This document shows, in pieces, positions 21,060 through 64,000 of a stretch of DNA of 64,000 nucleotides; positions within the stretch are counted from its first letter, which is position 1; every line of letters begins with the position of its first letter. The translations under genes and the position numbers were made by a program. Below the pieces are notes generated by a model. The model was not told the origin of the DNA and did not search any database. It saw only the letters and a list, made by a program, of their open reading frames with translations. Location of the stretch: positions 164,287 to 228,286 of the IMG/VR virus record IMGVR_UViG_3300032242_002041, one strand, 5' to 3'.

Positions 21060-23717
21060 TTACCACTCAAATAAAGTTTGGAAGGTATTTTCGGTGTTAG
21101 TAGCTGCCGCTAGATCCCATTCCAACACACCTAACAAATTGTCTAATTTTTGATCTACCACTGTGGCTTCCATTTCGCTGTCATCAAATGGTAGTTCTTT
21201 AAACCACGTAGGAAGATGTGTTTCATCAGTAGGATAACCTATTGACGTCCAGCCCAGTGGGTTTGCTTTAAGTTTGCAAACAATAGTTTTCATGCCATCT
21301 ACAATTTGCATACTATACTTGTCACTGTTCATACGACGCAAATTGTTCCAGTTAAGTGCGGCACGGACATGTCCTGGCATGTTGGCTTTGCCTAGGCGTT
21401 CTTCTTCCTTGCCATATTTGGTCAAGTTGTTTACACGCTTAGGACTACCCTTTTCCCAACCTGGACGTTCTTTGAACTTGTACTTGAACTCGCGAATCTT
21501 TTCAATGATTTCTTCACGACTTGTGCCAATTAGTACCTCATCAAGAATTTGACTTAGGAATTCTTGAATAACCTTAGGAGTATCACTACGCTTGAGATCT
21601 AATCCCATGGCTTTTACTTTACCCGGTGATCCGTGTGTGTCTACACGCTTGTTTTCTTTGTCGTAGTACATGACAGCATACCGCTTTTTAGTAATAAACA
21701 AGCCTTTACTGGCAACAATCTCACGTCCACCTTTAATAACATCGCCCATCTCCCTAGGCACGTGAAATGCTTGTTCCATAAAACCTGGAAAGCTATCGTT
21801 AACTTGATCAGCAATACTGTTATACAGTCGAACGGCAATTTCACGACTCCAGGTCATGTTGCCTGCTTCTATTTCTTTTTGTAGTACAGGATACGCTGTA
21901 AAATAACACGAGTCTGTATCACCATATATAATTGCCTCGCCTACGTGATCATACACACCTGTGATACATTCGTTCACATACGCATCCATATGCCGGGCAA
22001 TTGCACGACCAGTAAGAGTTGTGGATTGACCAATACGCTTATCAAAGAAACGGCAACCAGGATTAAGAATAGCACCATAGAGACTGTTGAGGTTAATCTT
22101 TTTAACAAGTTGACGCTTGTCCCAGTATTCTTCATCTTCTGCATTTTTACACTCCTTTAATCGGGCCTGCATCTCTTTACGTTCAGCATACCAACGTTTT
22201 AACAATCCTGGAATAACAGCTTCCTTCTCATAGGTAAAGATAGTACCGTTAGCGGTAATCATCCAAGGATGATTGCTATCAAAAATTATCTTCCATATGT
22301 CAGCGGCACTGTGTACACTCTCCTCACCGTCTTTCCAGTCAATGGTAATTTCTGTACCTACTTCGGTATTCATGACTGCTTCGTATTCTAAACTTCCAAA
22401 CAGGCCTTCCCATGCCCCGGCAAATGAGCTACCTGCTCGCATCTTATCACCAATATAGCGTTCAGTCATTATAGGTCGGAGTTGTCCTACAATAGTTTCA
22501 GGTCCCATATTAAGTGCTCTAATAGCACTTGGATACAGTGAGTTAATATCTATACTACCTACATACTCGTGTATGCCTTTTTTTGGAAACGCAACATAGG
22601 CACCTGCGGCTTGTGTGTCTTCATCCGAATAGCGTTCCTTGCGATTAGGCACAACCATACCACGCTCGTGTGCTTCGTTAATAATTGCTTGTTCTGTTAC
22701 AGCTACAGCACCCATTGTAGTTTGTAGTAACACTGTGTTTTCGTGTGCTAGGGTATTGGCCAAATCCAAGAACTTTAATTTCTTATCCAGCTTGGCAAGA
22801 ATCATTGTGTCCTGACGGTTATATTCGATAAACTTTTTAAAGTTTTGATTGTACAATTGATCAAGTGTGCCTTCAAACACCGTCTTGGTTTCTTGTAACT
22901 CATATTCAGCAATAGCATCCAAACTATAACTATGGCGTTCTTCGTATGTGTACTTGCGATACAGTTGCATATAGTCCATATGCACACGACCAATTAAATC
23001 GTAGGTTTCGTTTTCTGCACCAAAGCGTTCGAACATACGTTTCTTAGGGTACTGGTTCCACAGGCAAAATCTGCGTGTATCATCCTTGCTGAGAATACGT
23101 GTAACACGATTTACTGTGTAGGGTATATCATAACCCTCTGAGTTCCAACCGGATAGTGCATCGGCGTCTTCGATAAGGTCCAAGAATGTTTTTAACATTT
23201 CATCTTCACGCTCAAAGACGACGCAGTTTTCAAACTCCTTGGCAATTTCGTTCGCAGTTGCACGACTCATATGCTTGGGCGGAACAACTAGCGTGACCAT
23301 TTGATCGAGCCATTGCAAGTAGACCGAGATTGCAGTGATAGCATTAAATGGATCTGTTGTTGGTGAGAAACCACGTTCGGGATCAAAGTCTACTTCAATG
23401 TCAAAGAATGCTACGTTTAACTTGGGACCATCTTGCCCTTTGTAGTTTTCTTCTAAGCACCGAAAGATTGGATTGATATCACTCTCATACAGTTGCTTGC
23501 CTGACTGTATGCGAATTTCTTTACGAAACTCTTTGTTGTTGCGTGTGCTGAATCTACTGACAGGTGTGCCGAATAGGCTTAGGAATTTACCACGAGGATC
23601 CTCGTAATAAAATACATAGTTGGCCGGATATTCTTGATAGGTTCTACGTCCATCCTTCCGTTCAACTACATGAATACGATCGTGTTCACGATCAAATAGT
23701 GCATCTACATAACTCAA
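21060..23717 (-). CDS. polB: family B DNA polymerase
   Basis: FFDIEV ExoI, WNSEGYD, DINSLYPS, KINLNSLYG, YGDTDS, KKRY; TTG start. Confidence 0.97.
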   Translation of the reverse strand: MSYVDALFDREHDRIHVVERKDGRRTYQEYPANYVFYYEDPRGKFLSLFGTPVSRFSTRNNKEFRKEIRIQSGKQLYESDINPIFRCLEENYKGQDGPKLNVAFFDIEVDFDPERGFSPTTDPFNAITAISVYLQWLDQMVTLVVPPKHMSRATANEIAKEFENCVVFEREDEMLKTFLDLIEDADALSGWNSEGYDIPYTVNRVTRILSKDDTRRFCLWNQYPKKRMFERFGAENETYDLIGRVHMDYMQLYRKYTYEERHSYSLDAIAEYELQETKTVFEGTLDQLYNQNFKKFIEYNRQDTMILAKLDKKLKFLDLANTLAHENTVLLQTTMGAVAVTEQAIINEAHERGMVVPNRKERYSDEDTQAAGAYVAFPKKGIHEYVGSIDINSLYPSAIRALNMGPETIVGQLRPIMTERYIGDKMRAGSSFAGAWEGLFGSLEYEAVMNTEVGTEITIDWKDGEESVHSAADIWKIIFDSNHPWMITANGTIFTYEKEAVIPGLLKRWYAERKEMQARLKECKNAEDEEYWDKRQLVKKINLNSLYGAILNPGCRFFDKRIGQSTTLTGRAIARHMDAYVNECITGVYDHVGEAIIYGDTDSCYFTAYPVLQKEIEAGNMTWSREIAVRLYNSIADQVNDSFPGFMEQAFHVPREMGDVIKGGREIVASKGLFITKKRYAVMYYDKENKRVDTHGSPGKVKAMGLDLKRSDTPKVIQEFLSQILDEVLIGTSREEIIEKIREFKYKFKERPGWEKGSPKRVNNLTKYGKEEERLGKANMPGHVRAALNWNNLRRMNSDKYSMQIVDGMKTIVCKLKANPLGWTSIGYPTDETHLPTWFKELPFDDSEMEATVVDQKLDNLLGVLEWDLAAATNTENTFQTLFEW

Positions 23718-57016: not shown

Positions 57017-57754
57017 ATGAGTAGACAAAAAGCAGTTAGTAAACAACAAAAACGTCAAATGACATACCAAGAAAACACCATAAGATTTGATCAAGCAAAA
57101 CCACAAAAGCAAAGGCCCATTGATATCGTGCCACGTTCACGCAATCAAGAACGCCTTGTATTAGCTTTACAAAGTGCTGATCAGCATATTGTGGTCACAG
57201 CAGGGCCAGCAGGAACAGGAAAGACATATTTGGCCATGCTAGCAGCAGTCAAGGCTTTTAGAGCTGGAGAAGTAGATCGCATAGTATTAACGCGACCAGC
57301 AGTAGGAGTGGAAGATGAAAAGCATGGGTTCCTACCCGGTGATTTAAATCAAAAAATGGATCCGTGGGTTCGCCCATTGACCGATATACTTAGAGAGTAC
57401 TATCGTCAGCCCGACATCCAGGCCATGATAGAGGAGCAAACTATAGAGATTGCCCCGCTCGCTTTCATGCGAGGTCGTACTTTCAAAAGTGCATATATTA
57501 TAGCTGATGAGATGCAGAACGCAACTCCTAGTCAGGTAAAAATGCTGATGACCCGTATCGGCGAAGGCTCAAAAATCGTAATCACGGGCGATGTAGAACA
57601 GGCGGATCGCAACCGCGGCAACAACGGGTTAATGGACCTATGCCAAAGATTGCAGGAAGGAGGTGTAAAGGGAATAGCTGTTTGTCATTTGGACAACCGA
57701 GACATACAGCGGCATGCTATCATTGATAGTGTGCTTACGCTTTACGCTGACTGA
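57017..57754 (+). CDS. phoH: PhoH-like ATPase
   Basis: GPAGTGKT, GFLPG, FMRGRT, DEMQN, TRIG, GD.EQ.D. Confidence 0.95.
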   Translation: MSRQKAVSKQQKRQMTYQENTIRFDQAKPQKQRPIDIVPRSRNQERLVLALQSADQHIVVTAGPAGTGKTYLAMLAAVKAFRAGEVDRIVLTRPAVGVEDEKHGFLPGDLNQKMDPWVRPLTDILREYYRQPDIQAMIEEQTIEIAPLAFMRGRTFKSAYIIADEMQNATPSQVKMLMTRIGEGSKIVITGDVEQADRNRGNNGLMDLCQRLQEGGVKGIAVCHLDNRDIQRHAIIDSVLTLYAD

Positions 57755-58356
57755 CCAGTAATGTGTTCATAAATGTGCCTCCAGTTTTTTACTATTGTAA
57801 TATCTGGATGGTGCTTGTGCATATTATGACCATGTTCCAGGACTAGAGGGCTGAGACCATATTTGTACCCGGTCTCAGCATTCTCCCATTTATCTTCAAT
57901 CCAAAATAATCCAGTGCCTTCATATTCTTCCAAGGCATCGTCTTTGTGTGCGCCAGTGTCTAGACATACAATTCTTTCAAATGCTGTTGGCCCAAACATT
58001 TTGTGAATATTCATTTCGCGCAATCTTTGAGCATTAGGATCAAGACTTAGTGAAGTAATACAGTGGAAGATGTATCCATGTTCTTCGTGCAAGCGTTTGA
58101 CATAGTACATGGCATCACGTTGGGCTGGTAAAAATCCAATTGCGGCACTTTCGTTGAATATACGAATTAATTTGACCACTTGCTCTCTGGGTATGCCGTA
58201 GCGTACACTCATATCATAATTGAGCTTACTGCCCGGAACTTCTTCGAAACCGTGCTCCTGCATCCAAACATTAAAGGCCCACTCCCAGTCGAGTAAACAC
58301 CCGTCTGCGTCAGTTAGGATTAATTTGTTTTTTTTGTTTCTATATTTCGATTTCAT
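57742..58356 (-). CDS. HAD-family 5'-nucleotidase-like phosphatase
   Basis: DADGCLLD, ITS, WIEDK; TTGACC-17-TATAAT promoter at 58363-58391. Confidence 0.8.
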   Translation of the reverse strand: MKSKYRNKKNKLILTDADGCLLDWEWAFNVWMQEHGFEEVPGSKLNYDMSVRYGIPREQVVKLIRIFNESAAIGFLPAQRDAMYYVKRLHEEHGYIFHCITSLSLDPNAQRLREMNIHKMFGPTAFERIVCLDTGAHKDDALEEYEGTGLFWIEDKWENAETGYKYGLSPLVLEHGHNMHKHHPDITIVKNWRHIYEHITGQSA

Positions 58357-58387: not shown

Positions 58388-58672
58388 TCAACCAGCTGGA
58401 ATTTCAGCTTTTATATCAACAGGATGCCCGTTTTCTGCAAATAAACGTTCCATAATGCTGGTATAGAATGGATAGTAATATCCAACAATACGATCCCAAT
58501 CTTTAGGAATGGTTGTATCACGCAAGGCGGCCTTAAGAACTTTTAGTTCTTTAAAGTCTAGAATTACGCTGGCAGTTTGCCAATCTTTAGTTCTAACCCG
58601 GGTAGCCACAGTCATACCTTCATCAATTTTACCATTAGCCTGGTAAAAGTAGGTTAACATTAAGTATCTCAT
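58388..58672 (-). CDS. hypothetical protein
   Basis: Overlaps the clamp loader stop. Confidence 0.65.
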   Translation of the reverse strand: MRYLMLTYFYQANGKIDEGMTVATRVRTKDWQTASVILDFKELKVLKAALRDTTIPKDWDRIVGYYYPFYTSIMERLFAENGHPVDIKAEIPAG

Positions 58673-59589
58673 AATCTGCTCAATTCTACTAGAGTGGATG
58701 ATAAATTAATCTCTTGGTCTGCTACCAAGGGCATATTGGCCATGCCATTCTTAATAATAATAATAGCAGAATCCTGTTTTTCTACATCAGTAGACCACAG
58801 GTCCAAGTTGTCATACATCCATCGAAAAATATCTTCAGTTTCTTCTGGAGTACTTTGCTGACAAATCAGTGTGCGAGCTTCGCGAATCTTTCCAGCTTTA
58901 AACAATTGAACACAGTCTAACTTCCAATCGCCCACACTTTTATCTGTTGTGTTGGGAGCATTCAACACACCGGCTTGACTATTTTGTTGTAGCAACTGCA
59001 AACACTTACGCAGGTCTGGATAGGTAGCACGAACATAACTGTCTAGGGTATCGATGTCAAACTCTACGTTCTCTGTGACCAACACAGTGGCCGCACGGGC
59101 TGTAAATTCTGTATGATCCGTTTTTAGAATATGTAATTGTTGCAGTCTCGAATGTAGCGGTGGAATAATCTTGTTAGGATAGTTACAAGTTAAAATAAAA
59201 CGGACGCTGTGACTGTAGTCTTCCATTAAGTTACGCATAGCTGGCTGAACACTATTAGGATTCAAATAGTCCGCTTCGTCAATGAACACTACTTTAAAGT
59301 TACCATAAGGCATGGTTTGACAAAATGAAATTAGTTTGTCTACCCATTCAATCTTACGTCCTTCTTTACTACCATTGGCATATAGGACATCAAACTCGTC
59401 TACTCCAAGCTCATTGATCAGCATCTTGCCAAGAGTAGTTTTACCTGTGCCCGGGCTACCACTAAACAATAGATTTGGAATAGATTGATCCTTAATCCAT
59501 GCCTCTACTTGCTGGCGTTGATTATCATCTACAAATACATAACCGTCAATTGTTTTAGGTCTGTATTTTTCTATCCACAGTTCGTTCAT
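58669..59589 (-). CDS. clamp loader AAA+ subunit (gp44/RFC-like)
   Basis: WIEKYRP, GSPGTGKTT, IDEADYL, FILTCNY, SR motif. Confidence 0.93.
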   Translation of the reverse strand: MNELWIEKYRPKTIDGYVFVDDNQRQQVEAWIKDQSIPNLLFSGSPGTGKTTLGKMLINELGVDEFDVLYANGSKEGRKIEWVDKLISFCQTMPYGNFKVVFIDEADYLNPNSVQPAMRNLMEDYSHSVRFILTCNYPNKIIPPLHSRLQQLHILKTDHTEFTARAATVLVTENVEFDIDTLDSYVRATYPDLRKCLQLLQQNSQAGVLNAPNTTDKSVGDWKLDCVQLFKAGKIREARTLICQQSTPEETEDIFRWMYDNLDLWSTDVEKQDSAIIIIKNGMANMPLVADQEINLSSTLVELSRL

Positions 59590-59983: not shown

Positions 59984-60385
59984 TTATTCTTTGATTTGTT
60001 TTGGTATGTGAACAGCATCACTTTGTGTGTCGTCCTGGGGACGATCCGCCCTATCGCTGATCAATAAAATATCTTTGGGATCAATTTTACGAATGGTGCG
60101 TTTGTGCGCTACCTGTCCATCTTCGATGTCGATGCCTCGTGTCCAACGTCCGTGTGCTACCATGATCCATTGTCCTACTCGAACTTCTGTTTGTTTTGGA
60201 CCTACAGCGTAGACACGACCCCAACGTGGACGAATACCTAGACTGGTTCCGTTATCATTGGGTAGGATAATACCTGACTGTGTAATGCGTGTATCAAACT
60301 CCATGTCTGCTACTAATATATTATCGTGCAGGGCTTTAATTTGTTCTTGTTGAATTTGGTGTGGTGCAAATGCCGCTTTAGTCAT
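59984..60385 (-). CDS. groES: co-chaperonin GroES-like
   Basis: LHDNILV, TQSGIILP, GRVYAVGP, VRVGQ. Confidence 0.85.
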   Translation of the reverse strand: MTKAAFAPHQIQQEQIKALHDNILVADMEFDTRITQSGIILPNDNGTSLGIRPRWGRVYAVGPKQTEVRVGQWIMVAHGRWTRGIDIEDGQVAHKRTIRKIDPKDILLISDRADRPQDDTQSDAVHIPKQIKE

Positions 60386-60393
60386 AGGTCCTC

Positions 60394-60867
60394 TTAAAAT
60401 TTTCTTACGCCTTTGTCTTGCGCTTGTTGGCGTCGTGTTTTGTCTAAATTCTGCTTGATTTCTCTACTGCGAGCAATGGCCTCGGCGAGTCCGCCAGCTA
60501 CTGGTTCCAGACTTGGTGCAGGCTCTGTAACCGGCTCCGTCACAGGTGCAGGTGCTACAACTGGTTCTGGTGTAGGATCTGCTACAAGTGTTACCACTGG
60601 TGCAGGTGGCTCTACATTTGTTTTGGTTTCTCGAACTTTTTTAGAGCTTGACTGAACTGGGGCAGCAGATACATTAGTTGTGGTACGATCGCTTTGTCGT
60701 TGAATTTGCTTTGCCTTAGTTTCAATAACTTGATTATTACTGTCTAATTTATCGCCTCGTGCATTGACTTTCATGTTGCCAACAGCACGTACATGTTCGT
60801 TTTGTAACATTATAGTGCCCAGATCAACGGACTTTCCTTGCGCACTTTTGTAAACTTTACTGGTCAT
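60394..60867 (-). CDS. hypothetical protein with Pro-rich linker
   Basis: AVGNMKVNARGD motif; TAAATA at 60892-60897. Confidence 0.7.
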   Translation of the reverse strand: MTSKVYKSAQGKSVDLGTIMLQNEHVRAVGNMKVNARGDKLDSNNQVIETKAKQIQRQSDRTTTNVSAAPVQSSSKKVRETKTNVEPPAPVVTLVADPTPEPVVAPAPVTEPVTEPAPSLEPVAGGLAEAIARSREIKQNLDKTRRQQAQDKGVRKF

Positions 60868-60894: not shown

Positions 60895-61416
60895 TTAACG
60901 TAAAAATTCACCTGGATCTAAATTATAGTGCAGGCTATTGATACGGTGTACACCCAATTTGTATAATACAAAACTTGCCACACTGGAACCACGTCCTACA
61001 CCCCAAATAATACGGTTAGCGACCATGGTATCTACCAGATATTTTAAATAGCGTAACAAATCAAATAGGTCACGTTCTTGATACAACAACAACTCTTGAC
61101 CGCAGCGTTGTAATTCGGCCTCGTCATTGCACAAATTTAATATGTGTTGAGCAATGTCAATTGTTTTATATTCATCGGGCATGTGCCAGGACTGTTGTTG
61201 TATTAGGTGAAACTCTGGAACCGATGATTCTTGGCTATAAGGAAACGACCAAGTAAGTAATGACTCTGGACGCTCAATGTATCTAGCCAGCTCTTCAAGA
61301 TTAACACTATCGTCAACTACTAGGTGTTTTAAAGAATCGATATTGCGTCCTTGCATAAGCAAATCGCATACATCGTTTTCTGAAAAAACTACCTCACTAA
61401 ATTTATTTTGTTTCAT
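60895..61416 (-). CDS. stand-alone fragment of DNA polymerase III alpha (DnaE-like)
   Basis: IIWGVGRGSSVASFVLYKLGVHRINSLHYNLDPGEFLR matches the DnaE GRGS region. Confidence 0.75.
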   Translation of the reverse strand: MKQNKFSEVVFSENDVCDLLMQGRNIDSLKHLVVDDSVNLEELARYIERPESLLTWSFPYSQESSVPEFHLIQQQSWHMPDEYKTIDIAQHILNLCNDEAELQRCGQELLLYQERDLFDLLRYLKYLVDTMVANRIIWGVGRGSSVASFVLYKLGVHRINSLHYNLDPGEFLR

Positions 61417-62011
61417 CGGGCTGTTTAAAATCTGCAAACACTACAATGTTTCCTGATGCGTCCGAAGTTGGTATATCGGACCATGCCAAGTCTATATCTC
61501 TCCAGGCTGTAGACTGGGGTATAGATACTACTTTGTCAGACTCTACGGGCACAAAATCACTGTGTGTTAAATCAGCGGTGGTCCACCAGTCTGGTTGCTC
61601 ATATCCCAAGGTATTTTCAAATTCACTGTGCAGGTAAGTCATATTTTCACCATAGGTGCTAGATAATTCGGTTTCTACTATGTTCATACGATCTTCGGTA
61701 ATGGCATTAAGTTTATAGTATAACATAATTCCTACCAACTGATCTACAGGGTCTCCAGGCATAGTGGTTATGTTAAGGTCTGCTTGAACAAATCGTTGGC
61801 ACTCGTTTTTTAATTCACTACTAATAAAAATAGTACTGTCTATTTGTGTATAGAGAAAATATTTGATTCGTTCAAATGAAATATTTTGATCAGCTGGATT
61901 TTCACTATTGGTTGTCATCCACAGTCTAAGGTTGTAGTTGTTCATACGCAACGTACCATCATAGTATACGCCGGCAGTAAAAGACATGTCATACTTGAGT
62001 CGTACATTCAT
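61403..62011 (-). CDS. hypothetical protein
   Basis: Operon ORF. Confidence 0.7.
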   Translation of the reverse strand: MNVRLKYDMSFTAGVYYDGTLRMNNYNLRLWMTTNSENPADQNISFERIKYFLYTQIDSTIFISSELKNECQRFVQADLNITTMPGDPVDQLVGIMLYYKLNAITEDRMNIVETELSSTYGENMTYLHSEFENTLGYEQPDWWTTADLTHSDFVPVESDKVVSIPQSTAWRDIDLAWSDIPTSDASGNIVVFADFKQPDETK

Positions 62012-63234: not shown

Positions 63235-64000
63235 TTATAATATTACTGCAATAATGATTTTTTCGCCGTCTGCAAGATCAGTTTCAAGCGATTTGGCAAA
63301 TACAGACATGGCATAACTGCGATCTCTTCCTATACTTTGGGCAAATCCTGCTTGCGAACTAGCAACCAAATTGTCACCTTTGTTTACCGGACCTACGACT
63401 TTTACAGGCACACGACCACGCAAGGCCACTGGCAGCCCAGATTGGCTAGCATTCATTAGGTGTGCTGGCTGAGTACTAATAGCCCCTGCAACTCGTTCGT
63501 CGGCCATTTCTGTAGTCACGGTTATTTCTTGTTTGCCACCAAATATAACCACAGTACCGGGTGCATAATCTGCATCTGACAAATAATTCTCTGCCAAGTC
63601 CGCGTATACTGCTGATGTTGCTTTGGCAAATACCGTGTTAAAATATCCAGTTGAGTTACCGATATTGCCAACGGCATTGGCATTGTTATTGATAATATTA
63701 CCAACAGTTAAACTTGATATATTTGTGATATTGTATCCAGCACCAGCAATATTAGAAGTCAGTGTGCCGCTAAAGGTTCCTGTAGCGCCAGTGGCACCTG
63801 CACCAGTAGCACCAGTAGCACCTGTGGCACCCGAGGCGCCGCCGCCTGGGCCAGTAGCTCCAGTAATGCCAGTAGCGCCTGTAGCGCCTGCACCAGTGGC
63901 ACCAGTACTTCCCTGAATACCTGTAGAGCCAACAATACCAGTGGCACCTGTAGCGCCTGCACCAGTGGCACCAGTACTTCCCTGAATACCTGTAGAGCCA
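63235..64000 (-). CDS. tail fibre C-terminus with collagen-like repeats and intramolecular-chaperone/peptidase G2-like domain (5' end outside window)
   Basis: Frame continues past 63597 to the window end; (GAT)n collagen triplets; [27 protein letters not shown]. Confidence 0.75.
63778..64000. repeat. collagen-like Gly-X-Y repeat with a 69-bp-period direct repeat
   Basis: cctgtagcgcctgcaccagtggcaccagtacttccctgaatacctgtagagcca occurs twice. Confidence 0.85.

What the first reader, a model, noticed from the sequence alone, without database searches (positions are those of the whole stretch)
60895..61416. DnaE fragment ending just before the catalytic PDxD motif, in a PolB phage
Seen: a clean 173-aa ORF with the GRGS motif that stops at GEFLR. 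Known: in DnaE the equivalent FERFL is followed within a few residues by the catalytic PD(I/F)D. No intein residues are visible. Inference: one half of a naturally split C-family polymerase-like enzyme (partner elsewhere), possibly repurposed for priming or handling modified nucleotides.
Basis: partly seen in the sequence, partly recalled or inferred. Interest (0 to 1): 0.65.

Follow-up and report, generated by a model that had tools for sequence, protein, structure and literature searches.

The report
One half of a split polymerase
This 173-residue jumbo-phage gene is the front half of a miniature, two-piece copy of the catalytic core of the bacterial replicative DNA polymerase; comparative genomics described the arrangement in 2021, so it is real and odd but not new, and its activity is still untested.

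Summary
Window 60895-61416 (minus strand) is an intact 173-aa ORF with GRGS at residues 141-144, and it ends in GEFLR. Residues 79-173 match the palm of C-family polymerases (E. coli Pol III alpha 278-393) and stop 8 residues before the catalytic Asp 401.

The interpretation also holds. Every complete relative tested encodes, far away, a 190-210-aa protein that starts at the DxDxD strand. That protein carries the third catalytic Asp and a stripped finger domain (E. coli 399-780 with about 200 residues deleted). Both halves occur in the same roughly 95 isolate genomes and in hundreds of metagenomic phage contigs. There is no intein, PHP, thumb or clamp-binding domain.

A co-fold of the window's protein with a relative's C-half scored 0.90 against 0.00 for the best control. 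It places the GRGS strand against the DxDxD strand.

The partner is absent from this 228-kb record. The record is about 66% complete, and the roughly 120-kb block that holds the partner in its closest large relative lies exactly between the record's two ends.

Iyer et al. 2021 (Viruses 13:63) already described this "split minimal DNA polymerase III alpha" in group 2.2 jumbo phages. Its function is untested; I infer an auxiliary or repair DNA polymerase.

The parts
60895..61416 (-). CDS of the N-terminal unit of the split minimal Pol III alpha (173 aa plus TAA stop)
60898..61182 (-). Residues 79-173: the N-terminal subdomain of the DnaE-type palm (helices, the strand before the GS loop, and the helices after it). 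It is equivalent to E. coli alpha 278-393 and ends 8 residues before Asp401.
   Evidence: VIA alignment, profile-to-PDB alignment, Pfam
60985..60996 (-). GRGS, residues 141-144: the G[GS] nucleotide-binding loop of the Pol-beta-type nucleotidyltransferase fold. It aligns with Taq Pol III alpha G423-S426.
   Evidence: Read; alignment; G141, R142, G143 and S144 are invariant in 25 sequences
61183..61416 (-). Residues 1-78: a phage-specific, variable N-terminal region with no DnaE counterpart. It ends in the invariant WHMP motif (the full WHMPDEYK motif is residues 77-84), which the co-fold places against the C-half.
61403..62011 (-). Context only: upstream 202-aa ORF of unknown function. Its stop overlaps the N-half start by 14 nt. 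Homologues sit upstream of the N-half in G001, MIJ3, Atu_ph07 and Phosso.
60394..60867 (-). Context only: downstream 157-aa ORF (phrog_14844, function unknown) with a conserved N-terminal domain of about 50 aa (AVGNMxVNARGD motif). It starts 4-40 nt after the N-half stop in 34 of 37 loci examined.
59984..60385 (-). Context only: GroES/gp31-like co-chaperonin, part of the conserved gene string
58669..59589 (-). Context only: large subunit of a T4 gp44/RFC-type clamp loader, part of the conserved gene string
21060..23717 (-). Context only: family B DNA polymerase, the phage's main replicase

Best explanation
The ORF encodes the N-terminal (nucleotide-binding) unit of the phage-specific, split, minimal DNA polymerase III alpha of T4-like 'group 2.2' jumbo phages. 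Residues 79-173 supply the first strand, the GRGS loop and the flanking helices of a Pol-beta-type nucleotidyltransferase palm. A separately encoded protein of about 190 aa supplies the next strand with DxDxD, the strand with the K-x-D third aspartate, and a stripped finger domain (RPxK and FKKxH motifs). The two bind non-covalently, the GRGS strand pairing with the DxDxD strand, and so rebuild one active site of about 365 residues. That enzyme has no PHP, thumb, clamp-binding or OB domain. Identity and homology of both halves, their co-occurrence, conservation of the catalytic residues and the absence of an intein are shown here. Heterodimer formation is predicted. Template-directed DNA synthesis as an auxiliary or repair polymerase beside the PolB replicase is inferred, as Iyer et al. 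proposed. My sub-confidences are: identity about 0.95, obligate heterodimer about 0.8, DNA polymerase activity about 0.5. In this phage the partner gene should lie in the unsequenced block of about 120 kb.
For: Homology of the N-half: (Z 8.9-10.7; all 16 chains with Z >= 5 are C-family polymerases). Partner family: it starts at DxDxD, matches phrog_11778 at E 4e-52, and its fold (pLDDT 92.6) aligns over 184-188 residues to E. coli alpha 399-780, Taq 460-838 and PolC 970-1295 with Z 7.8-9.6, against 3.7 for the next unrelated fold. In 34 C-half sequences D4, D6, D8, R12, H35, G38, K67, D69, R137, P138, K140, K167 and H170 are invariant. They align with the PDIDIDF, KMDFL, RPG and FNKSH motifs of DnaE. 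Co-occurrence: 94 and 96 isolate records with the same genus tallies, and 9 of 10 larger N-half-bearing records tested hold the partner. No PHP domain and no further PF07733 match above cut-off in 5 of 5 complete isolates. Co-fold: ipSAE 0.90 in three runs with a best control of 0.00. That mark was reached by 58 of 80 solved complexes and 2 of 110 mismatched pairs, and the counts hold only roughly because my own alignments were used. The runs agree in at least 97% of their contacts, the partner pLDDT is 90, and N-half residues 134-147 sit against C-half residues 2-10. Purifying selection. Missing partner explained: the own record is collinear with G001 everywhere except G001 at about 120-240 kb, which falls between the record's two ends. 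The G001 partner (140.1-140.8 kb) and its tightly linked neighbour both lie there. Prior description: PMC7824862.
Against: No partner is present in this 228-kb record, so for this phage the pairing is inferred from relatives. The co-fold used a C-half from a related phage whose N-half is 76% identical. The tool warns that a pass may reflect memory of solved structures, here perhaps the intramolecular contacts of full-length Pol III alpha, and that a pass does not measure binding. No biochemical or genetic data exist for any member. The mini-enzyme lacks the thumb. About 20 residues replace E. coli 642-749, the segment that by my memory holds the LRRAMGKK arginines contacting the incoming dNTP. 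It also lacks every known duplex- and clamp-binding domain. Ordinary processive DNA synthesis is therefore doubtful.
Confidence: 0.8

Rival explanations
1. The two halves do assemble, but the enzyme is not a template-directed DNA polymerase. It would be another kind of Pol-beta-fold nucleotidyltransferase, for example an untemplated terminal transferase, a primer-making or primer-extending enzyme, or one that acts on modified nucleotides.
For: The thumb, PHP, clamp-binding/HhH and OB domains are lost, and the finger segment E. coli 642-749 is replaced by about 20 residues. The phage already has a complete PolB, clamp loader and related genes. In PA5oct the C-half lies three genes upstream of a primase subunit gene.
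Against: Finger motifs found only in C-family polymerases are retained and invariant (RPxK, FKKxH). The C-half aligns at similar Z to PolC and Taq ternary complexes with DNA and dNTP (3f2b Z 9.6, 3e0d Z 9.4). No nucleotide-modification gene was found linked to either half. The weak PTPS/QueD-like lead for the upstream ORF (score 0.84) failed Pfam and PDB profile tests.
Confidence: 0.2
2. The N-half works on its own as a non-catalytic protein, for example an adaptor in the clamp-loader neighbourhood or a decoy for the host Pol III, and its link to the C-half is only phylogenetic.
For: Its gene is never next to the C-half: they are about 4.3 to 224 kb apart. It sits in a conserved string with a GroES-like gene and the clamp loader. 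This record holds it without a partner.
Against: Alone it carries one strand and the GS loop of an incomplete sheet, and residues 130-173 are modelled less confidently alone (75-89) than the whole chain in the complex (89-90). The GRGS loop has no evident use without the metal-binding strand, yet it is invariant. Co-occurrence with the C-half is near perfect. The missing partner is explained by synteny.
Confidence: 0.05
3. It is a decaying remnant of a captured host dnaE gene.
For: It covers only about 10% of a DnaE and stops before the catalytic residues.
Against: Length, both termini and 34 invariant positions are conserved in 25 divergent sequences. dN/dS is about 0.1 or less with saturated synonymous sites. 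It is present in 94 isolate genomes and in many metagenomic contigs. A complementary half exists with intact catalytic residues.
Confidence: 0.01
4. The halves are joined covalently by a split intein, as in cyanobacterial DnaE.
For: Split-intein DnaE genes are the best-known split C-family polymerases.
Against: The N-half ends at the equivalent of E. coli residue 393 with no extra residues. The C-half has 0-11 residues before DxDxD, which is too short for an intein C-fragment. The two together are contiguous with respect to DnaE.
Confidence: 0.01

Closest known systems
Split minimal DNA polymerase III alpha of group 2.2 jumbo phages (Iyer, Anantharaman, Krishnan, Burroughs and Aravind 2021, Viruses 13:63; PHROG families 11127 and 11778)
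   Same: All features tested match: an N-terminal NTP-binding unit of about 170 aa; a separately and distantly encoded C-terminal Mg- and template-binding unit; a T4-like jumbo phage with its own family B polymerase; no other Pol III domain. The window's protein matches phrog_11127 end to end and is 43% identical to the PA5oct copy.
   Different: Nothing differs in kind. It is an orthologue from an uncultivated phage, and the record is incomplete and lacks the C-terminal unit.
Bacterial replicative C-family polymerases (DnaE / Pol III alpha, DnaE1, PolC)
   Same: The palm is homologous: the GRGS loop, the DxD strand and the K-x-D third aspartate. Part of the fingers is also shared (RPG/RPxK and FNKSH/FKKxH).
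   Different: About 365 residues in two chains against 1000-1450 in one. No PHP domain, thumb, clamp-binding/HhH domain, OB fold or tau-binding tail. About 200 residues are deleted within E. coli 399-780. It has a phage-specific N-terminal region of 78 residues.
Split-intein DnaE of cyanobacteria (for example Synechocystis and Nostoc)
   Same: A C-family polymerase catalytic subunit encoded by two distant genes.
   Different: The cyanobacterial halves are full-size, are split elsewhere in the protein (from my memory of the literature) and are ligated by protein trans-splicing. Here there is no intein, and the break lies inside the palm between the GS loop and the DxD strand.

Membership tests
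Split minimal Pol III alpha of group 2.2 jumbo phages, N-terminal unit | Stand-alone protein of about 170-180 aa, homologous to the NTP-binding (GS-loop) part of the Pol III alpha palm, that stops before the metal-binding DxD strand | tested here: met
Split minimal Pol III alpha of group 2.2 jumbo phages, N-terminal unit | A separately and distantly encoded C-terminal unit with DxD, the third Asp and template-binding finger remnants in the same genome | tested here: inconclusive
   Absent from the 228-kb record, but the record is 66% complete and the syntenic block that holds it in G001 is missing. It is present in 9 of 10 larger related records.
Split minimal Pol III alpha of group 2.2 jumbo phages, N-terminal unit | Host genome is a T4-like jumbo phage with a classic family B polymerase and an RFC-type clamp loader | tested here: met
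Split minimal Pol III alpha of group 2.2 jumbo phages, N-terminal unit | No other Pol III alpha domain (such as PHP) in the genome | tested here: met
   Own record. Five complete isolates. In those isolates the only finger-domain (PF17657) matches are weak ones that lie inside the C-half itself.
Split minimal Pol III alpha of group 2.2 jumbo phages, N-terminal unit | The two units reconstitute one active enzyme | not testable with these tools
   Only a prediction is available: co-fold ipSAE 0.90 against 0.00 for the best control. No experiment is reported in the library.
Canonical DnaE/PolC (C-family replicative polymerase) | A single polypeptide with PHP, palm, thumb, fingers and a clamp-binding domain | tested here: not met
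Canonical DnaE/PolC (C-family replicative polymerase) | Pol-beta-type palm with a G[GS] loop and three catalytic aspartates | tested here: inconclusive
   The G[GS] loop is present in the window's ORF. The aspartates lie only in the partner family, where they are invariant.
Split-intein DnaE | Intein N- and C-fragments at the break | tested here: not met

The most novel reading that the evidence does not exclude
The mini-polymerase may be a multi-part machine. The small proteins that always travel with each half would replace the lost thumb and clamp-binding functions in trans, or would gate assembly so that the active site forms only at a set stage of infection. These proteins are the ORF starting 4-40 nt downstream of the N-half, the ORF overlapping the N-half start, and the phrog_11637 gene convergent with and overlapping the C-half. 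That would make it the smallest modular C-family replicase known and a working model of a pre-cellular Pol III.
Probability: 0.12. Interest if true: 0.65.

Novelty: already known. Interest (0 to 1): 0.3.

Why it matters
If the pair is active, it is the smallest C-family polymerase core known: about 365 residues in two chains, without PHP, thumb or clamp-binding domains. It would show what the Pol III active site needs at minimum. It would also test the proposal of Iyer et al. that it models an ancestral form of the bacterial replicase, and explain why phages with a full T4-type replisome keep a second polymerase. Cultured relatives exist (PA5oct, RaK2, 121Q, Atu_ph07), so the question can be tested directly. 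For this scan the main value is confirmation: a reader using sequence alone correctly predicted a split enzyme and where its partner begins.

Tried and rejected
1. Partner in the own record. A protein search, two profile searches and tblastn found nothing (best E 0.42), while the positive control in G001 gave 6e-76.

2. Linking a partner-bearing IMG/VR contig to this phage. blastn of 160 partner loci (L060-L139 and L142-L221) against the record gave no hit, so no contig could be assigned to this phage.

3. Stop-codon read-through from the N-half into the downstream ORF. In the window the two are in frame with a single TAA between them. Across 37 loci only 17 are in frame, and many of those have further stops, which is about chance.

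4. The downstream ORF as a degenerate remnant of the DxD strand. hhalign against the C-half profile gives probability 0.06%.

5. A PTPS/QueD-like lead for the upstream ORF, which would have fitted the 'modified nucleotides' idea. The atlas score was 0.84. Pfam scans of the 15 family members and a family profile search of the PDB found nothing.

6. Atlas look-up of the downstream ORF found only unnamed viral clusters.

7. Foldseek alone on the N-half was not significant (best E 0.26), although the top six hits were all Pol III alpha. The VIA second look gave Z up to 10.7.

8. Megablast of the region against isolate phages found no near relative.

9. Searches for experimental work on the split enzyme found only the 2021 paper. 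The main text of the PA5oct omics paper says nothing on these genes.

Full report
THE OBJECT

Window 60895-61416 holds an ORF on the minus strand: ATG at 61416, TAA at 60895-60897, 173 aa. An in-frame TTG at 61437 would add 7 residues, but all aligned homologues begin at the ATG. GRGS is residues 141-144 (window 60985-60996), and the protein ends in GEFLR.

Pfam PF07733 (DNA_pol3_alpha) matches residues 103-172 to profile positions 25-94 of 260, above the curated cut-off (27 against 23.9 bits, E 4e-6). PHROG 11127, a 171-position family labelled 'DNA polymerase', matches end to end at E 3e-37. So this is a family of short proteins, not a truncated long one.

The predicted fold has mean pLDDT 79.7, about 95 over residues 80-130. 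Foldseek alone gave only weak matches, although the top six were all Pol III alpha. The structural second look aligned residues 79-173 to M. tuberculosis DnaE1 307-413 (Z 10.7, rmsd 2.6 A, 92 aligned), E. coli alpha 278-393 (Z 8.9, rmsd 3.2 A, 92 aligned), Taq 298-455 and PolC 825-965. All 16 chains with Z >= 5 are C-family polymerases. A profile of the family aligns GRGS with Taq G423-S426, and the C-terminal EFL with the FERFL of Taq 450-454 and E. coli 388-392. Residues 1-78 have no DnaE counterpart.

THE GENOME

The window is the last 64 kb of a 228,286-bp IMG/VR virus record judged 66% complete. The record encodes a family B polymerase (window 21060-23717) and a T4 gp44-type clamp loader. 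Apart from the ORF itself, it has no PHP domain, no Pol III finger domain and no second PF07733 match.

The ORF's relatives are jumbo myoviruses: PA5oct/MIJ3 (43% identity), Atu_ph07, Phosso, SCTP-2, XacN1, RsoM2USA and the RaK2/121Q/GAP32 group. That is 94 isolate records plus many IMG/VR contigs. In all of them the gene is 170-182 aa long. It sits in one conserved string: unknown ORF, N-half, small unknown ORF, GroES-like gene, clamp loader, then PhoH in several of them.

THE PARTNER

A scan of five complete isolates for the Pol III finger domain gave weak hits in four. Each hit lay in an ORF of 188-210 aa. These ORFs start with, or within 11 residues of, DIDID. MIJ3 has one too (E 2e-68).

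The family is PHROG 11778. It is present in 96 isolate records with the same genus tallies as the N-half. It also occurs in at least 286 IMG/VR contigs.

In 34 sequences D4, D6, D8, R12, H35, G38, K67, D69, R137, P138, K140, K167 and H170 are invariant. By profile alignment they fall on the DnaE motifs PDIDIDF (E. coli 400-406), KMDFL (the third catalytic Asp), ALxRPG (E. coli to 641) and FNKSH (E. coli 756-760).

The fold is confident (pLDDT 92.6). It aligns over 184-188 of its 192 residues to E. coli 399-780, Taq 460-838 and PolC 970-1295 with Z 7.8-9.6. The next unrelated fold scores 3.7.

So the N-half covers E. coli 278-393 and the C-half covers 399-780, with about 200 residues deleted. 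The deletions remove the thumb and most of 642-749. Nothing beyond residue 780 is present. The break lies inside the palm, between the helix after the GS loop and the DxD strand.

No intein fits. The N-half has no residues past the break, and the C-half has at most 11 before DxDxD. The two genes are never adjacent. They lie about 4.3 kb apart in RsoM2USA and 15 to 224 kb apart elsewhere.

DO THEY BIND?

I co-folded the window's protein with the C-half of the closest large relative, G001, whose N-half is 76% identical. The score was ipSAE 0.90 in three runs, against 0.00 for the best of three controls. That mark was reached by 58 of 80 solved complexes and 2 of 110 mismatched pairs. These counts hold only roughly here, because my own alignments were used. 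The runs agree in at least 97% of their contacts, and the partner pLDDT is 90.

N-half residues 134-147 (the strand and the GRGS loop) lie against C-half residues 2-10 (the DxDxD strand). The invariant WHMP motif lies against C-half residues 41-44. This is the geometry expected if the two chains rebuild the palm sheet.

The tool warns that such a pass may come from memory of solved structures, which here could be the contacts within full-length Pol III alpha. It supports binding but does not show it.

WHY THE PARTNER IS MISSING HERE

Profile, protein and tblastn searches of the own record find no C-half (best E 0.42). The same profile gives 6e-76 in G001.

I mapped all G001 ORFs onto the own record. 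Own 228-153 kb matches G001 243-317 kb, and own 129-2 kb matches G001 0-118 kb. The block G001 120-240 kb has only two scattered matches in the record. It lies between the record's two ends.

The G001 C-half (140.1-140.8 kb) and its overlapping convergent neighbour (phrog_11637) both lie in that block, and neither is in the own record. The absence is therefore an assembly gap, not a gene loss.

Of the larger related records tested, 9 of 10 hold both halves. The exception is a 43%-complete fragment.

SELECTION

Against seven relatives, non-synonymous differences are 0.14-0.28 per site and synonymous ones 0.66-0.89 (saturated). This gives dN/dS of about 0.06-0.11 where it can be computed. Length, both termini and 34 positions are invariant in 25 sequences. 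There is no sign of decay.

WHAT IS KNOWN

Iyer, Anantharaman, Krishnan, Burroughs and Aravind (Viruses 2021, 13:63; PMC7824862) report this arrangement. [quoted passage not shown] They suggest it may cooperate with the family B enzyme in synthesis of one strand or in repair.

PHROGs and some GenBank records (Phosso, Turkey3) already label both halves as DnaE-like. I found no experimental study.

MECHANISM AND ITS LIMITS

Shown here: the homology of both halves, conservation of the catalytic residues, co-occurrence, and the absence of an intein or other Pol III domains. Predicted: an obligate heterodimer.

Inferred: a Mg-dependent nucleotidyl transferase that most likely extends primed DNA. 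The reason is that it keeps finger motifs found only in C-family polymerases.

Against ordinary replication stand three losses. The thumb is gone. The segment E. coli 642-749 is gone; by my memory of the E. coli sequence it holds the LRRAMGKK arginines that touch the incoming dNTP. Every duplex- or clamp-binding domain is gone. I therefore rate a different transferase chemistry as a live rival (0.2). Nothing found links either half to nucleotide modification.

SIDE OBSERVATIONS

The ORF just downstream (window 60394-60867, phrog_14844) starts 4-40 nt after the N-half stop in 34 of 37 loci. It has a conserved N-terminal domain of about 50 aa and a variable low-complexity tail. It is not related to the C-half. 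Its being in frame with the N-half in the window is chance (17 of 37 loci).

The upstream ORF (61403-62011) overlaps the N-half start by 14 nt and is conserved at low identity. A weak PTPS-like lead for it failed.

The C-half always has a convergent phrog_11637 neighbour, which overlaps its 3' end in PA5oct and G001.

These linked genes are candidate accessory parts but remain untested.

TOOLS NOT USED

I did not use the reads tools either.

VERDICT

The thing itself is already known from comparative genomics. Interest is modest (0.3) because the enzyme's activity is still untested and can readily be tested.

Noticed in passing
window 60394-60867 (-): A small ORF (phrog_14844, function unknown) starts 4-40 nt downstream of the N-half in 34 of 37 loci, across PA5oct-, RaK2- and Atu_ph07-like phages and metagenomic phages. 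It has a conserved N-terminal domain of about 50 aa (AVGNMxVNARGD motif) and a variable Pro/Glu-rich tail. It is not homologous to either polymerase half.
   Followed up: partly
window 61403-62011 (-): A 202-aa ORF of unknown function whose stop overlaps the N-half start by 14 nt, which suggests translational coupling. Distant homologues lie upstream of the N-half in G001, MIJ3, Atu_ph07 and Phosso and share a PWW..D....D motif. A weak PTPS-like atlas lead (0.84) was not supported by Pfam or PDB profile searches.
   Followed up: partly
L016:1800-2165 (-), L018:1745-2167 (-), L015:556-993 (+), L141:3025-3423 (-), G001 140785-141207 (-): The C-terminal half has a conserved convergent neighbour (phrog_11637, about 120-145 aa, function unknown, WWW..NR..P motif and a basic tail). 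It overlaps the 3' end of the C-half gene in PA5oct and G001. Like the C-half, it is absent from the own record.
   Followed up: partly
L035 and L036, just after 10510: In a complete 329-kb relative (G002, with direct terminal repeats), a 232-aa ORF with an HNH-like motif (HHIIP...N) sits directly downstream of the N-half, where the usual small ORF starts in the other loci. It may be a homing endonuclease.
   Followed up: no
window 60898-61416 (-), residues 125-167: The GRGS region also matches positions 396-438 of phrog_7513, a 461-position family of unknown function (E 0.002). That profile ends soon after the same point, so other phages may carry a longer N-terminal DnaE piece broken near the same site.
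   Followed up: no
window 63235-64000 (-), runs off the window end: An open frame with long collagen-like G-x-T/G-A-T triplet repeats, followed by a C-terminal globular domain. It is probably a tail-fibre-type protein, and the record ends inside it.
   Followed up: no
whole record G000 against G001: The 228-kb record is collinear with a 317-kb relative apart from one contiguous block of about 120 kb (G001 120-240 kb), which lies between the record's two ends. This gives a concrete prediction of what the missing third of the genome contains.
   Followed up: yes
window 57017-57754 (+) and 57742-58356 (-): A PhoH-like gene and a 204-aa ORF (its Phosso syntenic counterpart is annotated as a phosphatase) lie beside the clamp-loader gene string, as in MIJ3, Atu_ph07 and Phosso.
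   Followed up: no
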